The position numbers and the translations under genes were made by a program. Shown piece by piece: positions 9,343 to 64,000 of a stretch of DNA of 64,000 bases. Numbering within the stretch: the stretch's first letter is position 1; each line of letters starts with the position of its first letter. Under the pieces are notes generated by a model. It was given only the letters and a program-made list of their open reading frames with translations, did not search any database and was not told the DNA's origin. Origin of the DNA: Podarcis cretensis (Eukaryota); NCBI GenBank assembly GCA_951804945.1, contig OX638154.1, forward strand, positions 56,854,001 to 56,918,000. Reading direction: 5' to 3'.

Positions 9343-9471
9343 NNNNNNNNNNNNNNNNNNNNNNNNNNNNNNNNNNNNNNNNNNNNNNNNNNNNNNNNNN
9401 NNNNNNNNNNNNNNNNNNNNNNNNNNNNNNNNNNNNNNNNNNNNNNNNNNNNNNNNNNNNNNNNNNNNNNN
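9343..9471. other. Assembly gap (129 N)
   Basis: Run of N. Confidence 1.
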
Positions 9472-40508: not shown

Positions 40509-41304
40509 TGTCACAGACTGCCTGGACACAGAGGAATAGTGGGAGGCACCCCCATTCTTCTCAAAGGAAGGCTTAGAGCCCAGGGATTGGTGGTGGGACA
40601 AAGATGAGTGGTCAGAGAGAAGACTCGGAGGAAGAGGTGTCAAAACCTGAAGAGGTAACAGGCTTTAGTGAAGAGGGATCTGTGGCAGAGAGAAGTCCAG
40701 AATCAGAATCAGAAATGGAAGCAGGAGAGGGAGGGAGGTTATGAGGCAGAGATGAAGAAGCACGAGTGTCTTCTCTGCTCTGCTGCACCAAACTCCCCTC
40801 CCTCCCGTCTCCCTGGTATGAAGCAGGAGGAGCAAAGGCAGACATGTTGATGTAGCCTTGGATTGCTTGGAAAAGACCCAGAAGAAGAGGCAGGAACCTT
40901 CAGTCTCCACAACTGCCTCATAGACGCAAGACCTACCAAAGAGAGATACTGTGCTCATTAGGTCTGGCATTCTTGAGCCAGTGTGGGGTAGTGGTTAAGA
41001 GCGGTAGTCTCGTAATCTGGGGAACCGGGTTCGCGTCTCCGCTCCTCCACGTGCAGCTGCTGGGTGACCTTGGGCCAGTCACACTTCTTTGAAGTCTCTC
41101 AGCCCCACTCACCTCACAGAGTGTTTGTTGTGGGGGAGGAAGGGAAAGGAGAATGTTAGCCGCTTTGAGACTCCTTAAAGGGAGTGAAAGGCGGGATATC
41201 AAATCCAAACTCTTTTCTTCTTCTTCTTGAGCAGATCCTGCTTCTTCTAATAAAGTGATAACTTCACTTATTCCATGTGATTTATTGCTGGCTCGCTCCT
41301 AACA
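40509..41304 (+). mobile_element. Solo LTR (Gypsy-like) with inserted SINE
   Basis: TGTCA...TAACA ends; 5-bp TSD GAAGA (40504-40508 and 41305-41309); AATAAA at 41249-41254; purine-rich U3. Confidence 0.8.
40975..41226 (+). mobile_element. tRNA-derived CORE-SINE (Squam3-like)
   Basis: Box A TGGGGTAGTGG; box B GGTTCGCGTCTC; CORE-like GCTGGGTGACCTTGGGCCAGTCAC; (CTT)n tail; flanking repeat TTCTTGAGC. Confidence 0.85.
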
Positions 41305-55340: not shown

Positions 55341-56922
55341 CTAAAAAAATATTAGAAACAGAATGCTATGTTAACACATTCCAGAAAAGCCCCTTTCTCT
55401 CTTAGAGAAATATTCTACCAAAAGACTCAATAAAGTTGTATGGAAAATTCTAATCCACAACTGTTGGCTGTGAGCACATTTCATTTCTAAAAAATAAAAT
55501 AAAGTGTATTTGTCTTTCCAGATGAGCTGTCTATGATATAAGAATGTTCACAATGCCTTACTCAGGGCAGCCCACACATTCCTGAAGAAGCCTCTAGAGC
55601 CAAGATATTGGAAGAATGGTAATATTTATTGAAATATAAGATCAGCAAATCAAGAGCCAATTAATAAGTGAGGGCAGATGAGGGGAGCACCTCCTGGCCA
55701 TGTCAGCTGCTTCACATAGTAGTTTCCTAGCCAAGGATTGAGTGTACTTCTCCCCCATCCTTTGGGGTATTGGGGGGTGGGGCTGAACATGTAGACCATG
55801 ACCCTGCAGCAAAGCGTTCACCCAGGGCCACTCCCTGTGATTGGTCACTTATACCCTGGTAACCTCCTTGTCCCCTCCTCTTTGGGAATTCCTGCTGAGT
55901 CTCCTTCAAGTAATGAATAGGTAAAGTAAATTCACTCTTGATAATGGCAGGAGTGCCACTGTTTGGATTTGAATATGAAAGAAAGTCAGAGCATAGGTGT
56001 GAACAAAAGTTGGGGCTATCTCTGGTCTACTCTCTTGAGCAAAGGATATCCACCTCCCTTGGCTGGACATGCCACTAACAGAACAAAATGTGAAGGCTTG
56101 GATCCTTGGGGCACCATCTCTTTCTGACATATGGTAAAAAAATTAAGTAGAAATAAAAATAATAAGCTACCATTTGTGCCTCATGTTTCCAGAATGCCCA
56201 ATAATAAATTGTAATGATAATTCCCCATAGTCTGATTTAGAATTGGGTCGGCAGTTCCAATTCCAATATCACTTGAAATAGTTAGCTACTTGGCATTTAA
56301 CATGGTGGCTTGTGGGAGGAAAGCTTTAGAAGTCATGTCAGCTACAAGGTTTAAAAAATTATTCCATCTTCACATAAGCTAAGGCGTACTTGGATTGTAA
56401 AACTTCCCAATGATTGGCAAGACAAGGTCAAGGATTGCACAGATCCTTCTTCCTTATTCTCTGGATTTGACTCACATTTTCGCAGTCATAAAAGTATCAT
56501 TTGGTGCTTAGTTTTGCTTAGACTATTATTACTGTCCAAGAGTTGGACAAGATAGATGAACTAAAAGCACATTCTGTATACATGCTGAACCTTGTCTTAC
56601 ATTCTGGGCAGCAGATCTACTTTTGCAGGAAATGACATTTAATTTGTAGTACATCTGAGCATTATGTTAGGTAAATTCATATTCAAAAAAAAAGTAATGA
56701 CAAACCACATTGCCATGGGCATAGCCAGGATTTAATTTGGGGGGGAGGCAGGCTTTATGTTGGGGGGGCAGAGCCTCAGTAAAGTTTGTTTGTTGTTTTA
56801 CTTGATTGCCCTCTGTCCCGCCTTGGTTGCGCCCATAAACATCACCCATAATAAAGAATCACTCTGCTGGTGGCAGAAATAGAGTGGCCAATAACTTTAG
56901 ATTAATTAACTGAAAGGATCAC

Positions 56923-57748
56923 TGTCAGGGGTTCAGGAGCAGAGGCACAGGGAAGAGAGGAGATGGAGAGCGAAGGGGAAGAATCCGAGGGCAGCGTAGG
57001 AGAAGAGGACAGTGGACTGAGGGATTCCATGAGCCTCTCCAGCGAATCGGAAGATTCACAGAAGGGGGCGCCAGTGGCCAGGGGTAGGGGGTTCCCAAGG
57101 GGAATGCCCCAGGAGCAAGGGGGCAGCAGGGACTCCCAGAGCACTAGTTGGAAATCAGGACCAGCTTCCCCACCAGAGCAGAGTGGGGGGGAAGAGTCCC
57201 AAGGATCGGGGCCAGTGCATTCCCCACCAGGGAGAGAAGATAAGGCAGGGCTGACCACACCTCCATCGGAGAGTCAGACAATGGAGGGGAGGTCAGATCC
57301 GGCCAGTATCCCGGAAGAGGGAAGCAGTGACAGAAGTAGTATAACGGTCAGGAGGAAGGTCACTGGGTTGGCGCGAGAGGCAAGTTCAAATGTACAGGAG
57401 CGCGGGACAGCAGAGAATGAGGATTGGGAACCGGGTCCTAAAGCCCGCCGGAGGGAGGGGGAGGAGCTAAGCGACTCAGCGTCGGAAGAGTCCAGAAAGG
57501 GCAATGCCCCAGCAGGCAGGAGGACCCAGAGGAGGAGAGAGCAGCGTAAAAGGTGGAGCAGGGCTAGGATCTTAAACTGGTGTCATAGGGGAGGAGACTC
57601 AGACGGTACTTCGCCGGTCTAGGCTTTAAGACGTAGAGCTGCGCGCTGCGGCTTTGAAATGGAAACTGAACCTCAATAAAGACTTTTGTACATAACGACA
57701 GCCTCGCGTTGGTCCTCTGTGAGCTGGGACCTAGGGGCAGCTCTGACA
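56923..57748 (+). repeat. 5' LTR (826 bp)
   Basis: Direct repeat of 60873-61698 with 10 substitutions by manual count and no indels; AATAAA at 57675-57680. Confidence 0.97.
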
Positions 57749-57750
57749 GT

Positions 57751-57761
57751 AAGTACCGTCT
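57751..57761 (+). promoter_or_regulatory. Self-priming primer-binding site (non-tRNA)
   Basis: AAGTACCGTCT is the exact 11-nt reverse complement of AGACGGTACTT at 57601-57611 in the LTR; no TGG tRNA-type PBS is present. Confidence 0.85.
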
Positions 57762-57840
57762 CCTTAAAAACCTCGCAACGTGAGTGGACGCAGCGAGGGG
57801 CGAAAATTGGTACTTCGCGAGCTCACGAAAGCAGCACAAG

Positions 57841-58917
57841 ATGACTACCGAAGAACAAATGGCAGCCCTGCAAAACGCAGTGACACAACTTAACGCAGAA
57901 ATACTAGCGTCCAGGAGGAGAGAAGAGGAAGCAGAGGCTGTCTGCAAGGATCTGCAAGCCAGGTTGGAAATGTTGACTAAACAGGGGCTACCGGGAGCCA
58001 GACCAGAGGGGATTGGGCTGGGAAAGAGAGGAGGCAGCCTTGTGTCTCATTTCGATGGGAGTCTGCAGCACTATCCTAACTTCAGAGCAGACGTGGTTTT
58101 TGCGCTAAAGTTACTGGAGAAGGACTTTAGAGATGAGCAGGAGAAAGTAGGCTTCATACTAACGCATCTCCATGGAGAAGCTAAAGCGTGGTTGCGCAAT
58201 CTGTGGAGAGATAATGATCCAGCCCTCCAAAACGCGAATGCCTTCATTAAGGCAATGGATGCTTGTTTTTTATCAGCGATAGATGTAGATGTCGCCAGAA
58301 AAGAGATACATGGATTGAAACAAGGCAGAGCCACTGTGAGGCAATATCACTCCCGCTTTTTTGCATTGGTCAACGCACTGGGATGGGAAAAAGATTCAGC
58401 GGCCGTTAGGGACCTGTTCTGGGAGGGGCTGAACGGGGCTGTGAAAGACGAAATCGCAAGGGGGGAGAGACCCCAGAGCACTCAAGAAGTTGTCCAGAGA
58501 GCGCTGACGATTGGGGTGCGTCTGGAAGAACATCCCTGGAGCAAAGACGAAGGGCGTTGGGGACGCACACCAGCGAGAGCACCTTCCTTCTTTCCCAGGG
58601 ACTCAGCGCGCGCTCAATCCACGCCTCCACTGGGTGGGGGAGAGGAGCCGATGGAGATAGGTGATGCCAAGGCTCAGTCAGCAACCAGAGCCCTAACACG
58701 GGGAGCAGCCAAAGTGAAGCCTCCTAGAGGGAACAGGAAGTGTTACATCTGCGACAGTGCTCAGCACATGGCAAAAGAGTGCCCCCAGAGGCTCCACAAG
58801 CACATTGCAGCCTCAGCAACAGTAACAGAAGCAGTTCAGCAGAGAGAACCACAGCAGGGAAACGACAAAGTCTGGCTGGAAGCAGAGCCACTGGGGCCCA
58901 GCCAGACGAGTCAGTGA
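57841..58917 (+). CDS. gag: Retrotransposon Gag, intact, 358 aa from first ATG
   Basis: N-terminal coiled-coil-like segment; capsid-like region (FDG...KVGFILTHLHGEAKAW...LKQG..TVRQYHSRF...FWEGLN); EPMEIG motif; CCHC knuckle CYICDSAQHMAKEC. Confidence 0.93.
   Translation: MTTEEQMAALQNAVTQLNAEILASRRREEEAEAVCKDLQARLEMLTKQGLPGARPEGIGLGKRGGSLVSHFDGSLQHYPNFRADVVFALKLLEKDFRDEQEKVGFILTHLHGEAKAWLRNLWRDNDPALQNANAFIKAMDACFLSAIDVDVARKEIHGLKQGRATVRQYHSRFFALVNALGWEKDSAAVRDLFWEGLNGAVKDEIARGERPQSTQEVVQRALTIGVRLEEHPWSKDEGRWGRTPARAPSFFPRDSARAQSTPPLGGGEEPMEIGDAKAQSATRALTRGAAKVKPPRGNRKCYICDSAQHMAKECPQRLHKHIAASATVTEAVQQREPQQGNDKVWLEAEPLGPSQTSQ
58857..58916 (+). promoter_or_regulatory. -1 ribosomal frameshift signal: slippery G GGA AAC plus predicted H-type pseudoknot
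   Basis: GGGAAAC at 58857-58863 in gag phase; 6-nt spacer; 10-bp stem GTCTGGCTGG (58870-58879)/CCAGCCAGAC (58898-58907); loop CACTG (58889-58893) pairs with CAGTG (58912-58916). The protease ORF is in the -1 frame. Confidence 0.88.
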
Positions 58918-59525
58918 AGCAGTCCCCAGGAATCTTGCAGCCCACAGACCCCCTCCCGCCCAAACCAGTGGTGCAGCTCACCGCAGCACTCCAGCTTCCC
59001 AATGGGCTCACCATGGAAGTCCCTTTTACCATTGACTCTGGTAGCAATGCAGACTTTATAGGAGTGGATTTCATAAAGCAACATAGCATAGCGCTCCTGC
59101 CTGCCACGATGCCCCTAAAAGTAGTGACAGTTGATGGAAGAGAATTGCTGGGGGGACAGGTGGTACAGCAAACGCCGCCAATGGTGATGCGAATTGGAAA
59201 TCACCGCGAAGTCATCAGCTTCAATGTCACCCACCTGTCAGACACGCCCATAGTATTGGGCATGAGCTGGTTGGACAGGCACAGCCCGGCATTGGCATGG
59301 TAGCAGCGTAAATTGACCTTCTGCTCCTCCTACTGCGCAGAACATTGCATCATGACTAACCAGGAAGACGAGGGGCAAGAGGATGACCCACAGCTACAAC
59401 TGGGCATGCTGCAAGCGGTACCCGACAAGTACAAGGCGTTTTTGGAGGTCTTCTGCGAGAAGGAAGCGGACAAGCTGCCTCCCCACAGACCCTACGACTG
59501 CAAGATTGACCTCCTGCCGGGGGCG
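58860..59525 (+). pseudogene. pol: pol 5' part: aspartic protease and start of RT, with in-frame TAG at 59301-59303
   Basis: FTIDSGSNADFIG active site; IVLGMSWLDRHSP protease C-terminus; same frame continues VPDKY..F.EVF...EADKLPPHRPYDCKIDLLPGA, the typical lead-in to sushi-type RT, then breaks off. Confidence 0.9.
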
Positions 59526-61572
59526 CCAGTTCATCTCGAGTTTCTGGCAGAAGCTGATGGGGATCCTGAACGTCAAGGTCAACCTAGCGTCAGCAAGACA
59601 CCCGCAGACCAACGGACAAGCGGAGAGGGTCAACGCCATCATGCAGCAGTACCTGAGATGCTACGCGAACCAGCAGCCCTCGACCTGGGTGGACTACCTA
59701 CCGCTGGCCGAGTTTGCCTACAACAACATGAAACACGTGTCCACGGGGGTGACACCGTTTTTCGCCAACAATGGGCGACATCCCAGGACCTTCCCGGGCT
59801 TAGAGAAAGAGGGGGAAGGGGAGCCGCAGGGAGCAGAGGCATTGGCAGAGGAGTTACAGGAGGTCCATGAACAGCTCCGAAGGCAGTTGGAGCTAGCTAA
59901 ACACGTGTACAAGATGCAGGCAGACAGACACAGGAGAGTTGGGGAGGACATACGGGTAGGGGACTGGGTCTGGTTAGCAGCCCAGGCAGTGCCGGCCAGA
60001 TCCTTAGCTAAGAAGAAGCTCGGACACAAGCAGCTAGGCCCTTACCAAGTCGAGGCACAGATCAACCCAGTGGCCTTCCGGTTGACACTACCGGAGGGAT
60101 CCAGAATGCACCCGGTCTTTCATAGATCGGTACTCACGCCCTACAAGGCACCTCACAGGTTTCAGGCGCCAGGGACAGCTCCTGGCCCGCTTAGAGACGC
60201 ACCCACGACAGGGGGGTCACCGAGGGCGGGGCCGCTCAACGAGGTCACGGAGATTTTGGACTCAAGATGGGGGGAAGAGGGGGTTAAATATCTCCTCGCC
60301 AGGGAAGGTACCCCGGCCAGCGCCAACAGCTGGGTACCGTATTATGCGGTGGAGGAGCACTACCTCAAAGACGAGTTCCACGCACTCTTCCCACACAGGG
60401 CCATGCCGGAGGATTATTTTGACGAATATCTTTTCACACCCACACTTTCAGCCAGCACGTTCCGGGGTTTCTCTTCAGAGGAGGACACGGCGCCGGAGAC
60501 TAGCTCCCCAGAGGGGTCCCTCTCAGGGTTTGGCACAGGCGGCTCTTATTGGTGGGAAGATCAACCTGTGGTGGGGTGGAGCAGAGATCTGCCGAGCGGG
60601 CCCGCGCACGCAGCGTCACCCCAGGCGACAGGGGGAGAGGGGGTCATGGACGTGTTGGGGGAGGATCCGGGGTTCGAACACATCGGCAGAGAGATGGAAG
60701 CTGAGGAGATCGACATCGACGAGCCCGTTGAGGACTGGCCGGATCTACCCGGCTGGAGGCACACCACGGGGGAAGAACTGTATCCTGCACTCACCCCCAC
60801 AACACTGGAGCACCCAGAACCCACGCCAGAAGAGGGGGAGGGGGGAAGGGGGGGCTTTGAGGGGGGGATGGATGTCAGGGGTTCAGGAGCAGAGGCACAG
60901 GGAAGAGAGGAGATGGAGAGCGAAGGGGAAGAATCCGAGGAGAGCGTAGGAGAAGAGGACAGTGGACTGAGGGATTCCATGAGCCTCTCCAGTGAATCGG
61001 AAGATTCACAGAAGGGGGCGCCAGTGGCCAGGGGTAGGGGGTTCCCAAGGGGAACGCCCCAGGAGCAAGGGGGCAGCAGGGACTCCCAGAGCAGTAGTTG
61101 GAAATCAGGACCAGCTTCCCCACCAGAGCAGAGTGGGGGGGAAGAGTCCCAAGGATCGGGGCCAGTGCATTCCCCACCAGGGAGAGAAGATAAGGCAGGG
61201 CTGACCACACCTCCATCGGAGAGTCAGACAACGGAGGGGAGGTCAGATCTGGCCAGTATCCCGGAAGAGGGAAGCAGTGACAGAAGTAGTATAACGGTCA
61301 GGAGGAAGGTCACTGGGTTGGCGCGAGAGGCAAGTTCAAATGTACAGGAGCGCGGGACAGCAGAGAATGAGGATTGGGAACCGGGTCCTAAAGCCCGCCG
61401 GAGGGTGGGGGAGGAGCTAAGCGACTCAGCGTCGGAAGAGTCCAGAAAGGGCAATGCCCCAGCAGGCAGGAGGACCCAGAGGAGGAGAGAGCAGCGTAAA
61501 AGGTGGAGCAGGGCTAGGATCTTAAACTGGTGTCATAGGGGAGGAGACTCAGACGGTACTTCGCCGGTCTAG
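59518..61572 (+). pseudogene. pol: pol 3' part: integrase C-terminal half, GPY/F motif, chromodomain-like segment and long acidic/basic tail running into the 3' LTR
   Basis: RGRQFISSFW...HPQTNGQAERVN...YLR...AEFAYNN (integrase core end); GPYQV; HPVFHRSVL; EVTEILDSR...YLL...NSWVP; frame open to TAG at 61570-61572. Confidence 0.88.
60829..60872 (+). promoter_or_regulatory. Polypurine tract
   Basis: G/A-rich run immediately 5' of the 3' LTR TG. Confidence 0.85.
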
Positions 61573-61698
61573 GCTTTAAGACGTAGAGCTGCGCGCTGCG
61601 GCTTTGAAATGGAAACTGAACCTCAATAAAGACTTTTGTACATAACGACAGCCTCATGTTGGTCCTCTGTGAGCTGGGACCTAGGGGCAGCTCTGACA
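60873..61698 (+). repeat. 3' LTR (826 bp)
   Basis: Copy of the 5' LTR; preceded by the PPT and followed by TSD ATCAC; AATAAA at 61625-61630. Confidence 0.97.
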
Positions 61699-64000
61699 AT
61701 CACGAATACCTATACTAAGCTTATGATAGAAACTTAGAAAGTAGTTTTTAAATAAAATCTTGTTTAGCATATAGTGGGATTTTTAAAGCTATGTTTTAAT
61801 TTTTATCTTTTAATTTTAAAAGAATTGTAAAAAAAAAAAAATGGTACCCAGAACAGAATAAAATACAGTTATTTTACTGAAATGCATTAAAAACTATTAA
61901 ACAGAAACTATATATGTATTAAAAGATCAATATTTTATTCCATATGTCTATTGTATTGAGGAGAATTTTTTTGTAAAAAAACCCCCAATCTGTTCTGCAA
62001 TAAGAGATTAATAATTTATAGTACTATTTTAGGCATGTTTACTTAGGACTAAGTTCAACTTTACTCCTTTACTGCATACAAGTCTGTGTCTAAATAAATA
62101 TTTATGAACATTTCTTACATTTCTAGATGTATTTTATCATATGATATGCATTTCATATGCATTTTGGTGCTTTTTGTGTCAATAACTGCACTACAAAATT
62201 CAGGAAAATGTGAAATATGAGGGATAACTGCACTCTGATTTGCACATTAGTCTCTGAGGTGTGGATCAGGTCAATTCATATTGGAATTCACAAAATAATG
62301 TCCTCAAAATAATGTCCTGTAACATATTTAAAATACAAAAACTGTAAACTAATTCTAAAGATGAATGTCACTAGGAATACACACACACATGATTACTACC
62401 ACTTTATTTAACCTACAATATGAACTTAACTCTTCATCAAATACTAAAACATGGTGCATCCTAGATCAATAAGAAAGGCTGCATTTCAGGACAAAAGAAA
62501 TCCTGTTCCAGTAAATGCTAGCTGGAGTTTTTAAGTATGCCAACAATTATTATAAAAATGCAAGAAAACAGAGATATGTTAAGCAATCCTAAAATCTTCT
62601 TAAACCACACATTGTGCTTTTCTACAGAGAATTTTAAGATGAAAAATAGACCTTGAGGGTCTTTGACAAGCCTCAGGCAATATAAAGGAAAAAGGTCAAA
62701 CACACTGCTAAAAAGGACTGTTATCTTCAGAACAACAACTTATCAGCCAGCTTGCAGCCCTGCTTATTTACAGTTATTGGTCCCAGAGGAAGTGCACTTC
62801 AACACAGGTCACGATTACTTTGTAATGAGTTTGCCAGAAATGGTAAAGGAAACTAATTTGTAACAATGTGCTATTCCTTGCACATGAACTTTTGCAGACA
62901 CCTTTTTTTTTGTCCAGCAATGAATAACTAACTTCAGCTTCCCTAACAAGCAATGAAAACAGGAGTGTACTCAAAAACCCAACTTGCAGGCATGAATGTG
63001 TTGAAATATCAGTAATTATCTCTCTCAGCTGTCCATTACACTATTCATGATTATGATCAATTCCCCTGTGGTTGCTATACAGAATACAGATTTCAGGGGA
63101 TGAATTTGCACACGCAAATTAACACCATTTGGACGAAAATAGGTTGCACCTGTCAAAGCTTAGTAACAAAAGGTCAGATGCCCTCTTTTGCACCTAGAAC
63201 ATTTGGCTATTGTGTGCCTTGCTTGCAGGAATATAATTCTGGTTTGACTAAATAGAGAAAAGTGAGCACCATGGTGAACAGAAGAAAAAAGAATTAAACC
63301 TTAACTGAAAGCTCACAGTTAGCCCATTCTTTAAAATACACGTGAATAGAAGTAGCCAAGGCAATTTTGAGTAGTTTTTCAAAAGAAATATATCAAGTAC
63401 TCCTCTGTTTTTGTCGATACATTGCCAGGCCTCAAAATACTATTTTTCATCTGAACAATAAAAATCTGGACAAGATGGCAATAGAAAATCATTAATACAC
63501 TTGCAGCTGCATTTCAATCTATACAAAACCCTTAAATAAAAACAACCTGGGAACAAATGTGCAGAATTGCATAATACATACATCATTTACAGAGCTCGGA
63601 GTCTGAAATTGTGCTCAAGATAGCCAAGCAGAATTAATCTATGTTTTCAAATAAACTTTTTAAAAAAGCATTGAACTTTAATATTCATTCTAGAATGGGC
63701 CATCAGCTGAATGCTACTGAAAAGATAACAAAACTGAGGTGATAAAATGAAGCAATTATATAGATTATATTCTAAGTGAAAGCGGAAACTTCTCAAAAAA
63801 AGTCTTTAAAAATATTTTCCCAGAGAACCATGTGACACATTTCATTTTTTTACTCATGAAAAAAATGAAATACAGTAATGGGAAGCAGTCAAATCCATTT
63901 TTTCAGACAACAAAATCACAAAAAGGAATAAATATTTTTTAAAAAATCATATTCACCATATACACCACTATTCAGAAAGCACCTGTAAAAAAAAAAAAGC

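What the first reader, a model, noticed from the sequence alone, without database searches (positions are those of the whole stretch)
60391..61572. Integrase frame continues about 400 codons past the chromodomain, through the PPT and the whole U3 of the 3' LTR
Seen: no stop from the integrase core to TAG 61570-61572, about 50 nt before the LTR AATAAA. The tail is Glu/Asp/Ser/Gly-rich with scattered Trp (YWWED, EDWPD) and ends in an Arg-rich segment (RRTQRRREQRKRWSRARILNW). The U3 part is also open in the 5' LTR (56963-57622, 219 aa). Known: chromovirus pol normally ends soon after the chromodomain, but plant CRM centromeric elements extend integrase into the 3' LTR, where it carries a targeting (CR) motif. 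Inference: this lizard family encodes an LTR-embedded accessory or targeting polypeptide. I do not know of one described in vertebrate sushi-like elements. Caveat: G/A-rich DNA has few stops by chance, and the two LTRs were identical at insertion, so they are not independent evidence.
Basis: partly seen in the sequence, partly recalled or inferred. Interest (0 to 1): 0.85.

Follow-up and report, generated by a model that had tools for sequence, protein, structure and literature searches.

The report
Integrase tail encoded through the LTR
In a family of wall-lizard (Podarcis) retrotransposons the polymerase/integrase reading frame runs about 390 extra codons past its last domain, through the whole promoter half of the terminal repeat. 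Divergent subfamilies all keep this frame open, so it is a real protein tail, probably a host-tethering or nuclear-import module.

Summary
The frame 59383-61572 has no stop from the integrase core to TAG 61570-61572. The 393 post-chromodomain codons have 0 stops against about 9.5 expected, and 0 of 5000 dinucleotide shuffles were open.

The feature belongs to the family, not to this copy. Podarcis muralis and P. lilfordi proteins of four subfamilies carry the same tail to the same end, including complete PR-RT-RH-IN polyproteins of about 1500 aa. Tail identity between subfamilies is 45-66%, against 86-97% in the integrase core and SH3 domain. All indels between subfamilies are in frame. Unconstrained drift to that divergence would add 9-10 stops.

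A sister family (48% identical integrase) appears to read through its polypurine tract too. Other chromoviruses stop 10-30 residues after the chromodomain.

An 11-nt self-primer places the transcription start at 61551. The frame therefore covers all of U3, including a TATA-like box, plus 22 nt of R.

The tail looks disordered: acidic and Ser-rich, with an invariant F-x-G-F block and a basic end. Its function was not tested. The window copy is itself an internally deleted, dead element.

Other readers of this scan noted related tails and LTR frames elsewhere in this genome.

The parts
56923..57748 (+). 5' LTR (826 bp, TG...CA). It carries a second, untranscribed copy of the U3 frame, open from 56906 to 57622.
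   Evidence: 10 substitutions and no indels against the 3' LTR; extent of the open frame.
56918..56922 (+). Target-site duplication ATCAC. The second copy is at 61699-61703.
   Evidence: flanking sequences.
57751..57761 (+). Primer-binding site of the self-priming type. It is the exact reverse complement of 57601-57611 and of 61551-61561.
   Evidence: Self-priming in the Tf1/sushi group: PMC6317226.
57841..58917 (+). gag (capsid-like domain plus CCHC knuckle), ending in TGA.
   Evidence: PF03732, PF19259, zf-CCHC.
58932..59531 (+). Protease and the first part of RT (matches P0012 residues 1-198). It is interrupted by a stop at 59301-59303. The internal deletion junction lies within 59506-59531.
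59506..60390 (+). Remaining integrase: end of the catalytic core, the SH3_Tf2-1 domain (59959-60144) and a chromodomain-like stretch (60241-60381) that lacks all three aromatic-cage residues.
   Evidence: SH3 4.6e-15; Chromo 14.1 bits, below the 25.1 cut-off; alignment to CDYL2.
60391..60872 (+). Internal part of the tail (160 codons): acidic and Trp-containing. The invariant aromatic block plus F-x-G-F is at 60403-60483, with F-x-G-F itself at 60460-60471.
   Evidence: F-x-G-F in 25 of 25 family proteins; codon-position bias p=0.003.
60829..60872 (+). Purine-rich tract ending in the polypurine tract just before the LTR. It is translated as a Gly/Glu-rich stretch conserved in all subfamilies.
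   Evidence: 94-100% identity in this segment.
60873..61698 (+). 3' LTR. U3 is 60873-61550 (inferred), R starts at 61551, and AATAAA is at 61625-61630.
60873..61572 (+). LTR-encoded part of the tail (233 codons plus TAG): an acidic/Ser-rich region followed by a basic end.
61468..61530 (+). Arg-rich C-terminal segment with a predicted short helix. Its I-L-N codons (61519-61527) contain the TATA-like CTTAAA at 61521-61526, 30 nt upstream of the inferred start.
61551..61561 (+). 11-nt self-primer and inferred transcription start. It lies inside the codons of the conserved D-S-D-G-T-S end of the protein.

Best explanation
The element is a Tf1/sushi-type (chromovirus-related) LTR retrotransposon of lacertid lizards. 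Its pol frame does not stop after the chromodomain-like domain. It continues for about 390 codons through 160 internal codons, the polypurine tract, all of U3 and the first 22 nt of R. The tail is made as the C-terminal extension of integrase within the Pol polyprotein.

Shown:
- The extension is kept open, with the same end, in divergent active lineages.
- It evolves fast, like a disordered linker. It keeps short fixed blocks.

Inferred:
- The tail is an intrinsically disordered adaptor.
- The block next to the chromodomain (aromatic cluster, 8-residue Ser/Thr linker, F-x-G-F, then acidic residues) would dock a host chromatin or transcription factor.
- The basic clusters at the end would serve nuclear import and/or nucleic-acid or nucleosome binding, guiding the integration complex. 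This would be analogous to the long disordered, NLS- and tether-bearing C-terminus of yeast Ty1 integrase.
- U3 is therefore dual-use DNA, serving as both promoter and coding sequence. The tail probably arose by stop loss and read-through into purine-rich LTR sequence.
For: 1. Openness beyond composition. The tail has 0 stops against 9.5 expected, and 0 of 5000 shuffles were open.
2. Family-wide retention. Complete P. muralis polyproteins (P0012 and P0019, P0022-P0024, P0027, P0028) and shorter proteins (P0013, P0015, P0021, P0025, P0029, P0043, P0001, P0007) end at the same C-terminus as the window frame. That is 15 of the 26 proteins that reach the tail; the other 11 stop short, most after a visible shift of frame.
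3. Four subfamilies differ by at least 10 indels of 1 to 35 residues, all in frame.
4. A neutral substitution simulation run to the observed 50-65% amino-acid identity gives 7-10 stops with 0 of 1000 open. For the U3 part alone it gives 4.9-6.2 stops with at most 0.5% open.
5. The sister family (P0044, P0045, P0086) has a bona fide chromodomain at 43 bits. It also appears to read through a PPT-like Gly/Glu stretch into an acidic-then-basic tail. More distant chromoviruses end 10-30 residues after the chromodomain.
6. F-x-G-F sits at a fixed position in 25 of 25 family proteins, and F-R-G-F after an acidic 8-residue linker in 3 of 3 sister-family proteins. This layout matches the published TND-interacting motif (PMC9987994).
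7. No start codon is conserved within the tail, and the 5' LTR copy lies upstream of the inferred transcription start. Translation as a pol fusion is therefore the simplest route.
8. Signs of disorder. E, G, S, P and R make up 58% of residues. AlphaFold pLDDT is about 40, with one short helix in the basic end. There is no Pfam, PDB or Atlas match.
9. Precedent. Ty1 integrase has a large disordered C-terminal half with an NLS and a short tethering segment (PMC8487063, PMC7459421, PMC10050235).
Against: - No nucleotide sequences of other copies could be obtained, so dN/dS was not measured. The tail's amino-acid divergence (45-66% identity) could be close to neutral apart from the ban on stops and frameshifts.
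- The U3 part shows no significant codon-position bias (p=0.15).
- The most conserved C-terminal residues overlap a TATA-like box, the inferred transcription start and the self-primer. Their conservation may be imposed by DNA/RNA function.
- Database proteins are gene predictions and are therefore enriched for open copies.
- The family-1 linker before F-x-G-F is Ser/Thr-rich, not acidic, and AlphaFold predicts no helix in the aromatic cluster.
- No expression, translation, binding or integration-site data exist.
- The window copy is itself defective. Its two LTR frames differ by 6 replacement codons and 1 silent codon, the pattern expected for a copy that is drifting neutrally.
Confidence: 0.6

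Rival explanations
1. The tail is a separate accessory protein rather than a working part of integrase. It would be released by the element's protease, or translated from a spliced subgenomic RNA. It would then act in trans, for example as a Rev/Rex-like RNA-export or nucleolar factor through its Arg-rich end, or as an acidic activator. This would parallel U3-overlapping genes of retroviruses such as MMTV sag or HIV nef.
For: - The Arg/Gln/Trp-rich end resembles arginine-rich RNA-binding and nuclear-import motifs.
- A perfect GTAAGT lies at the LTR/PBS border, 57749-57754. Another note of this scan (s1-837404) proposed splice signals.
- The internally deleted window copy keeps gag plus the tail.
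- The acidic-then-basic design recurs in the sister family.
Against: - No start codon is conserved inside the tail across subfamilies. The Met at the PPT/LTR border is absent in the sister family, and the ATG at 56963 is specific to one subfamily.
- The tail is always in phase with integrase in full-length proteins.
- GTAAGT overlaps the PBS, whose sequence is fixed by the self-primer.
Confidence: 0.2
2. The frame is kept open for a reason other than the peptide's own activity. One possibility is that ribosomes must travel to the 3' end of the RNA to shorten the 3' UTR and avoid decay. Another is that this places nascent Pol near the 3' R region for cis-preferential packaging or priming. On this view the sequence of the tail is otherwise free to drift.
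For: - Fast amino-acid divergence of the tail with strict retention of the frame and a fixed stop just after the self-primer.
- Weak codon-position bias in U3.
Against: - Fixed short blocks exist in the internal, non-LTR part (aromatic cluster plus F-x-G-F in 25 of 25 proteins, and a Y-W-W block), where no promoter constraint applies.
- Charge pattern and basic clusters persist although the residues change.
- Most LTR elements tolerate a UTR of this size (general knowledge).
- The gag stop already leaves kilobases of downstream RNA.
Confidence: 0.1
3. The open frame is an accident: purine-rich, T-poor DNA combined with young copies that all descend from one recent master element. On this view there is no selected coding function.
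For: - The region is only 13% T, and long ORFs also occur in other frames and on the minus strand, for example 60561..61208.
- The two LTRs of one element are not independent evidence.
- Database proteins are biased towards open copies.
Against: - Shuffles keeping dinucleotide content never give an open frame. The other five frames carry 5-16 stops.
- Subfamilies with only 45-66% tail identity, and many indels between them, all keep the same frame and end.
- The neutral simulation predicts 7-10 stops.
- The sister family has the same layout.
Confidence: 0.05

Closest known systems
Plant CRM (group A) centromeric chromoviruses and some Galadriel-clade elements (Beetle, Bingo)
   Same: The gag-pol/integrase frame passes the polypurine tract and ends inside the 3' LTR, where a putative targeting domain is encoded (PMC3059260, PMC3605345).
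   Different: - In CRM the chromodomain-derived CR motif itself lies downstream of the PPT. Here the chromodomain-like stretch is upstream, and an extra 390-residue non-chromodomain tail follows.
- The host is an animal.
- The nearest relatives by integrase are vertebrate and fungal Tf1/Tf2/sushi-type elements.
- Here the frame appears to cover all of U3, up to and past the transcription start.
Ty1 (Pseudoviridae) integrase C-terminal module
   Same: A long intrinsically disordered C-terminal half, dispensable for catalysis, that carries basic NLS clusters and a short host-tethering segment at the extreme C-terminus. CK2 regulation is reported (PMC8487063, PMC7459421, PMC10050235, PMC9673352, PMC2490736).
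   Different: There is no sequence similarity and the superfamily is different. The Ty1 tail is followed by RT within the internal region and is not encoded in U3. The partner, Pol III AC40, is known for Ty1 and unknown here.
Cellular TND-interacting motifs (IBM/TIM) that bind LEDGF/p75 and HRP2, and lentiviral integrase use of LEDGF
   Same: A disordered segment with a hydrophobic cluster, an 8-residue linker and F-x-G-F followed by acidic residues. F-x-G-F is reported as essential for LEDGF/HRP2 ligands, and linkers are phosphorylated by CK2 (PMC9987994). LEDGF tethers lentiviral integration complexes to transcribed chromatin.
   Different: Binding is untested. The family-1 linker is Ser/Thr-rich rather than acidic. 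Lentiviral integrase binds LEDGF through its folded catalytic core, not through such a motif. The resemblance is at motif level only, with no significant sequence match.
Retroviral genes overlapping U3 (MMTV sag, HIV nef)
   Same: Protein-coding sequence shares DNA with the U3 promoter/enhancer of the 3' LTR (general knowledge).
   Different: Those are separate genes with their own start codons and spliced mRNAs. Here the coding sequence is the in-phase continuation of pol, and no start codon is conserved.
Tf1/sushi-group vertebrate chromoviruses (sushi-ichi, Amn-san and relatives)
   Same: Domain order, the SH3_Tf2-1 integrase domain, the C-terminal chromodomain position, an 11-nt self-primer and a 5-bp target duplication (PMC6317226).
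   Different: The 33 relatives retrieved here outside the two lizard families end within about 10-30 residues after the chromodomain in the examples read. Family 1 has also lost the aromatic cage and fails the Pfam chromodomain threshold.

Membership tests
Tf1/sushi-group Ty3/gypsy retrotransposon (chromovirus sensu lato) | gag, then PR-RT-RNaseH-IN in that order, between LTRs | tested here: met
   P0012 has RVP_2, RVT_1, RT_RNaseH, Integrase_H2C2, rve and SH3_Tf2-1. The window copy keeps gag, part of PR and RT, and the integrase C-terminal part.
Tf1/sushi-group Ty3/gypsy retrotransposon (chromovirus sensu lato) | Chromodomain at the integrase C-terminus | tested here: inconclusive
   The window scores Chromo 14.1 bits against a cut-off of 25.1. 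P0012 has no hit at E<0.1. The stretch aligns to the CDYL2 chromodomain at E=0.14, with cage residues replaced by N, R and T. The sister family P0044 passes at 43.3 bits, so the stretch is a degenerate homologue.
Tf1/sushi-group Ty3/gypsy retrotransposon (chromovirus sensu lato) | Self-priming: the PBS is complementary to the first bases of the transcript | tested here: met
   There is an 11-nt exact complement between 57751-57761 and 57601-57611 (equivalent to 61551-61561), with about 2e-4 expected by chance in an 826-nt LTR. The family trait is cited from PMC6317226. The transcription start itself was not measured.
Tf1/sushi-group Ty3/gypsy retrotransposon (chromovirus sensu lato) | 5-bp target-site duplication | tested here: met
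   ATCAC on both sides. That 5 bp is typical of the group is from my own knowledge.
CRM-type element with CR motif | [quoted passage not shown] | tested here: met
CRM-type element with CR motif | Chromodomain-derived CR motif located downstream of the PPT, inside the LTR | tested here: not met
   The chromodomain-like stretch at 60241-60381 lies about 490 nt upstream of the LTR. The LTR-encoded part has no chromodomain or other Pfam match.
CRM-type element with CR motif | Membership of the plant CRM clade by RT/IN similarity | tested here: not met
   The closest integrases are lizard, amphisbaenian and fungal Tf2-like proteins. No tree was built.
TND-interacting motif (LEDGF/HRP2-type IBM/TIM) | F-x-G-F motif | tested here: met
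   Present at a fixed position in 25 of 25 family-1 proteins and in 3 of 3 sister-family proteins. The definition is from PMC9987994.
TND-interacting motif (LEDGF/HRP2-type IBM/TIM) | Acidic linker of 8-16 residues between the helix and F-x-G-F | tested here: inconclusive
   In family 1 the linker is 8 residues, all Ser/Thr/Pro/Leu/Ala with no Asp or Glu. In the sister family it is 8 residues rich in Asp, Glu and Ser.
TND-interacting motif (LEDGF/HRP2-type IBM/TIM) | Upstream short amphipathic helix with Phe/Leu/Ile/Val anchors | tested here: inconclusive
   An aromatic/acidic cluster is present and invariant, but AlphaFold predicts no helix there, with pLDDT about 52.
TND-interacting motif (LEDGF/HRP2-type IBM/TIM) | Binding to a TND/IBD domain | not testable with these tools
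U3-encoded retroviral accessory gene (sag/nef type) | Own conserved start codon and separate (spliced) mRNA | tested here: not met
   No Met is conserved across subfamilies and the sister family within the tail. RNA evidence was not obtainable.

The most novel reading that the evidence does not exclude
The integrase tail is a host-mimicry tether encoded in dual-use promoter DNA. Its invariant aromatic-cluster/linker/F-x-G-F block would bind the TFIIS-N-terminal-type domain of the H3K36me3 readers LEDGF/p75 or HRP2, or another TND protein, in the same way as cellular ligands do. The basic end would give nuclear import or nucleosome contact. A vertebrate retrotransposon would then have reached the lentiviral integration cofactor by a different, motif-based route. 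This may have replaced the methyl-lysine reading lost from its cage-less chromodomain. The whole U3, including the TATA-like box and the start site, would evolve under simultaneous promoter and protein constraints.
Probability: 0.2. Interest if true: 0.85.

Novelty: new variant of a known kind. Interest (0 to 1): 0.6.

Why it matters
Integration-site choice is well worked out for yeast Ty elements, Tf1 and retroviruses. It is not for vertebrate Ty3/gypsy elements. This finding gives a defined, conserved, about 390-residue integrase appendage with a few fixed short motifs, in a lizard genus whose copies look young (1.2% LTR divergence in this one). That makes the question testable through localisation, partner pull-downs and insertion-site mapping.

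It is also a clear case of an entire U3 serving as both promoter and coding sequence. It probably arose by stop loss and read-through, which bears on de novo protein birth and on how overlapping constraints shape LTRs.

In practical terms, LTR annotation pipelines that assume pol ends before the polypurine tract will mis-annotate these elements. The long 'genes' in Podarcis annotations named 'Gypsy retrotransposon integrase-like protein 1' are these polyproteins.

Tried and rejected
No DNA of the homologous proteins could be fetched, so dN/dS and codon-level tests were impossible.
- Scans of viral contigs and metagenome contigs with the tail alignment found no relative.
- Nothing matched the tail in Pfam, in the PDB by sequence with a single sequence or a profile, or in the ESM Atlas.
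- AlphaFold of the chromodomain plus tail with 16 sequences gave only a low-confidence model (mean pLDDT 40.9). No fold search was made on it.
- hhalign between the tails of the two families gave only a weak C-terminal match (P=0.014 over 26 columns). Homology of the two tails is suggested by layout and is not proven.
- The older solo LTR at 40509-40960, noted by another reader, shows no protein-level similarity to either family.
- A strict bipartite-NLS pattern is not conserved in all subfamilies. Only the presence of two or three basic clusters is conserved.
- Complex prediction was not used, because no host partner sequence was available within the rules.
- The composition-only explanation was rejected.
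- The alignment tools printed consensus lines automatically. These were neither used, saved nor reproduced.
Full report
**What is in the window**

A direct repeat of 826 bp bounds an LTR element at 56923-61698. The LTRs run 56923-57748 and 60873-61698, start with TG and end with CA, and differ by 10 substitutions and no indels. The element is flanked by a 5-bp duplication, ATCAC.

The interior is only 3.1 kb. It holds:
- gag at 57841-58917, with a capsid-like domain and a CCHC knuckle;
- a stretch matching the protease and the first part of RT at 58932-59531, with a stop at 59301-59303;
- directly after that, the end of the integrase core.

Residues 199-833 of a full-length relative are missing, and the junction lies within 59506-59531. 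This copy is therefore a dead, internally deleted derivative.

**The observation**

The frame 59383-61572 (729 aa) is open. In order, it contains:
- the end of the integrase core;
- an SH3_Tf2-1 domain (4.6e-15);
- a weak chromodomain-like stretch (14.1 bits, below Pfam's cut-off);
- 393 further codons with no Pfam match.

These extra codons cross the purine tract at 60829-60872, enter the LTR at 60873 and stop at TAG 61570-61572. That stop is 53 nt before AATAAA at 61625. The same frame is open in the 5' LTR from 56906 to 57622.

The region is only 13% T, yet composition does not explain the open frame. Dinucleotide shuffles give 9.5 stops on average and 0 of 5000 were open. The other five frames have 5-16 stops. 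The LTR part alone would be expected to hold 6.4 stops.

**Family evidence**

A full HMMER scan of 1.84 billion representative proteins with the tail found only lizard retroelement proteins, plus one low-complexity chance hit. Word-based searches and cluster look-ups added many Podarcis muralis and P. lilfordi proteins. Most of them are named 'Gypsy retrotransposon integrase-like protein 1' by automatic annotation.

Several are complete PR-RT-RNaseH-IN polyproteins of about 1400-1506 aa whose last residues align with the end of the window frame (P0012, P0019, P0022, P0023, P0024, P0027, P0028). Shorter models end in the same way (P0013, P0015, P0021, P0025, P0029, P0043), as do Logan-derived fragments (P0001, P0007). 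Of the 26 proteins that reach the tail, 15 end at this canonical end. The other 11 stop short of it, most after a visible shift of frame, for example P0004, P0008, P0011 and P0026.

The sequences fall into four subfamilies. Between subfamilies the identities are:

| Segment | Identity |
|---|---|
| Integrase core | 86-92% |
| SH3 domain | 92-97% |
| Chromodomain-like stretch | 69-88% |
| Internal tail | 48-66% |
| U3-encoded tail | 45-67% |

The tail values are similar to those of the linker before the chromodomain (50-69%). The subfamilies differ by at least ten indels of 1, 2, 10, 15, 18, 21 and 35 residues, and all keep the frame.

I simulated unconstrained substitutions on the window's tail DNA until the amino-acid identity fell to 65-50%. 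This produced 7-10 stops, with 0 of 1000 runs open. For the U3 part alone it produced 4.9-6.2 stops, with at most 0.5% of runs open.

**A second family with the same design**

The next-closest integrases (48-49% identity) are a different P. muralis family: P0044, P0045 and P0086. They have a bona fide chromodomain (43 bits).

They also continue past it, through a Gly/Glu stretch that resembles the translated polypurine tract and LTR start of family 1. Their tail is acidic and then basic, and about 170-195 residues long. In-frame indels separate the family's members.

Profile-profile comparison supports only the last 26 residues, and weakly (P=0.014). Without DNA, the LTR border in this family is an inference.

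The more distant chromoviruses retrieved are fungal Tf2-like proteins and unnamed metagenomic ones. In the examples read they end 10-30 residues after the chromodomain.

**How the frame sits on the LTR**

The 11 nt after the 5' LTR plus 2 (57751-57761) are the exact reverse complement of 57601-57611, which equals 61551-61561 in the 3' LTR. This is the arrangement of Tf1/sushi-type self-priming elements (PMC6317226), in which the transcript starts with the self-primer.

It places the transcription start at 61551. A TATA-like CTTAAA lies 30 nt upstream, at 61521-61526.

If this is correct, the frame covers all 678 nt of U3 and ends 22 nt into R. The TATA-like box then lies within the I-L-N codons of the conserved basic end, and the self-primer lies within the D-S-D-G-T-S codons.

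Two consequences follow. First, the 5' LTR copy of the frame is not in the element's own transcript, so the peptide must come from the 3' copy. Second, the conservation of the last 20 or so residues cannot be credited to the protein alone.

**Nature of the tail**

- Composition: E, G, S, P and R make up 58% of residues. Net charge is strongly negative over the first 200 residues and +7 over the last 33.
- Structure: AlphaFold with 16 aligned sequences gives pLDDT of about 40 throughout. The only helix in the tail covers nine residues inside the basic end. The shallow alignment limits this evidence.
- Codon-position bias: significant in the internal tail (p=0.003) but not in the U3 part (p=0.15). 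This fits a recently evolved or doubly constrained coding region.
- Start codons: no Met is conserved within the tail in all subfamilies and the sister family. This argues for translation as part of Pol.
- Fixed blocks: an aromatic/acidic cluster follows the chromodomain directly. It is followed by an 8-residue Ser/Thr-rich linker and F-x-G-F at a fixed position in 25 of 25 proteins. Other fixed blocks are a Y-W-W block, a Ser/Glu/Asp cluster of the CK2-site type, and two or three basic clusters near the end.
- Sister family: it has F-R-G-F after an acidic 8-residue linker and a Trp/Phe-containing segment.

Notes by other readers of this scan, made on other pieces of this genome, pointed to F-x-G-F as a LEDGF/TND-binding-type motif. 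I checked the published definition: a helix, an acidic 8-16-residue linker, and an F-x-G-F that is essential for LEDGF/HRP2 ligands, with CK2 phosphorylation of the linker (PMC9987994). The sister family fits it well. Family 1 fits only in part, because its linker is not acidic and no helix is predicted. Binding could not be tested.

The chromodomain-like stretch of family 1 has N, R and T at the positions that align with the three aromatic-cage residues of CDYL2. That these are the cage positions comes from my own knowledge. Methyl-lysine reading is therefore probably lost in this family.

**Mechanism proposed**

Shown:
- The extension is a selected, in-phase part of pol.
- It looks disordered and evolves fast.
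- It carries a few fixed short motifs.
- It overlaps the promoter region of the LTR.

Inferred:
- It works as an adaptor on integrase for host-factor docking and nuclear import or chromatin contact.
- The closest functional parallel is the long disordered C-terminal half of Ty1 integrase, with its NLS and short tether (PMC8487063, PMC7459421, PMC10050235). CK2 is reported as a regulator of Ty1 retrotransposition (PMC9673352).

The layout parallel is plant CRM group A and some Galadriel elements, whose frame also ends in the 3' LTR (PMC3059260, PMC3605345). These lizard elements are not CRM members, however. Their chromodomain-like stretch lies upstream of the polypurine tract, and their relatives are Tf1/sushi-type.

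The rivals are a separately expressed accessory protein, a frame kept open for RNA-level reasons, and chance. They are weighed in their own sections.

**Limits**

There is therefore no RNA evidence, no DNA of other copies, no dN/dS and no insertion-site analysis.
- Database proteins are gene predictions and favour open copies. The argument rests on the agreement of divergent lineages, not on counts of copies.
Consensus lines printed automatically by alignment tools were not used.
- I found no paper describing this feature in vertebrate elements. The library is incomplete, and Butler et al. 2001 on vertebrate Tf1/sushi elements is not held.

**Verdict**

This is a real feature that belongs to the whole family. 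It is a new variant of a known kind (pol reading into the LTR), unusual for its length, its coverage of the whole U3 and its occurrence in a vertebrate. Function is unproven. Interest 0.6.

Noticed in passing
window 59506-59531 (element 56923-61698): The window copy is an internal-deletion derivative. It joins the first part of RT to the end of the integrase core out of phase, losing the equivalent of residues 199-833 of a full-length relative. It keeps gag and the whole tail.
   Followed up: partly
window 57601-57611, 57751-57761, 61551-61561, 61521-61526: An 11-nt self-primer/PBS pair of the Tf1/sushi type fixes the likely transcription start. A TATA-like CTTAAA lies 30 nt upstream. Both lie inside conserved codons of the tail.
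   Followed up: yes
window 57749-57754: A perfect GTAAGT (5' splice-site-like) sits exactly at the LTR/PBS border and overlaps the PBS. It could be a splice donor or a by-product of the self-primer sequence. No RNA data were available.
   Followed up: no
window 60241-60381: The chromodomain-like stretch of this family has lost all three aromatic-cage positions (N, R, T) and fails the Pfam threshold. The sister family in Podarcis muralis (P0044, P0045, P0086) keeps a scoring chromodomain.
   Followed up: partly
proteins P0044, P0045, P0086 (Podarcis muralis): A second, distantly related lizard chromovirus family also appears to read through its polypurine tract into an acidic-then-basic LTR-encoded tail. 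That tail has tandem (L/M)-E-G-F and F-R-G-F motifs after acidic linkers.
   Followed up: partly
protein P0013 (Podarcis muralis): One copy carries a 35-residue in-frame tandem duplication inside the internal tail, spanning the Trp-rich segment.
   Followed up: no
window 60561-61208 (-) and 60344-60949 (+): Long ORFs in other frames of the same purine-rich region (215 and 201 aa). No homologue supports them. They look composition-driven.
   Followed up: partly
window 40509-40960: The older solo-LTR-like region noted by another reader shows no protein-level similarity to either tail-bearing family (tblastn, E<=1e-3).
   Followed up: partly
window 9343-9471: A run of 129 N (assembly gap or masked stretch). 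It was left untouched.
   Followed up: no
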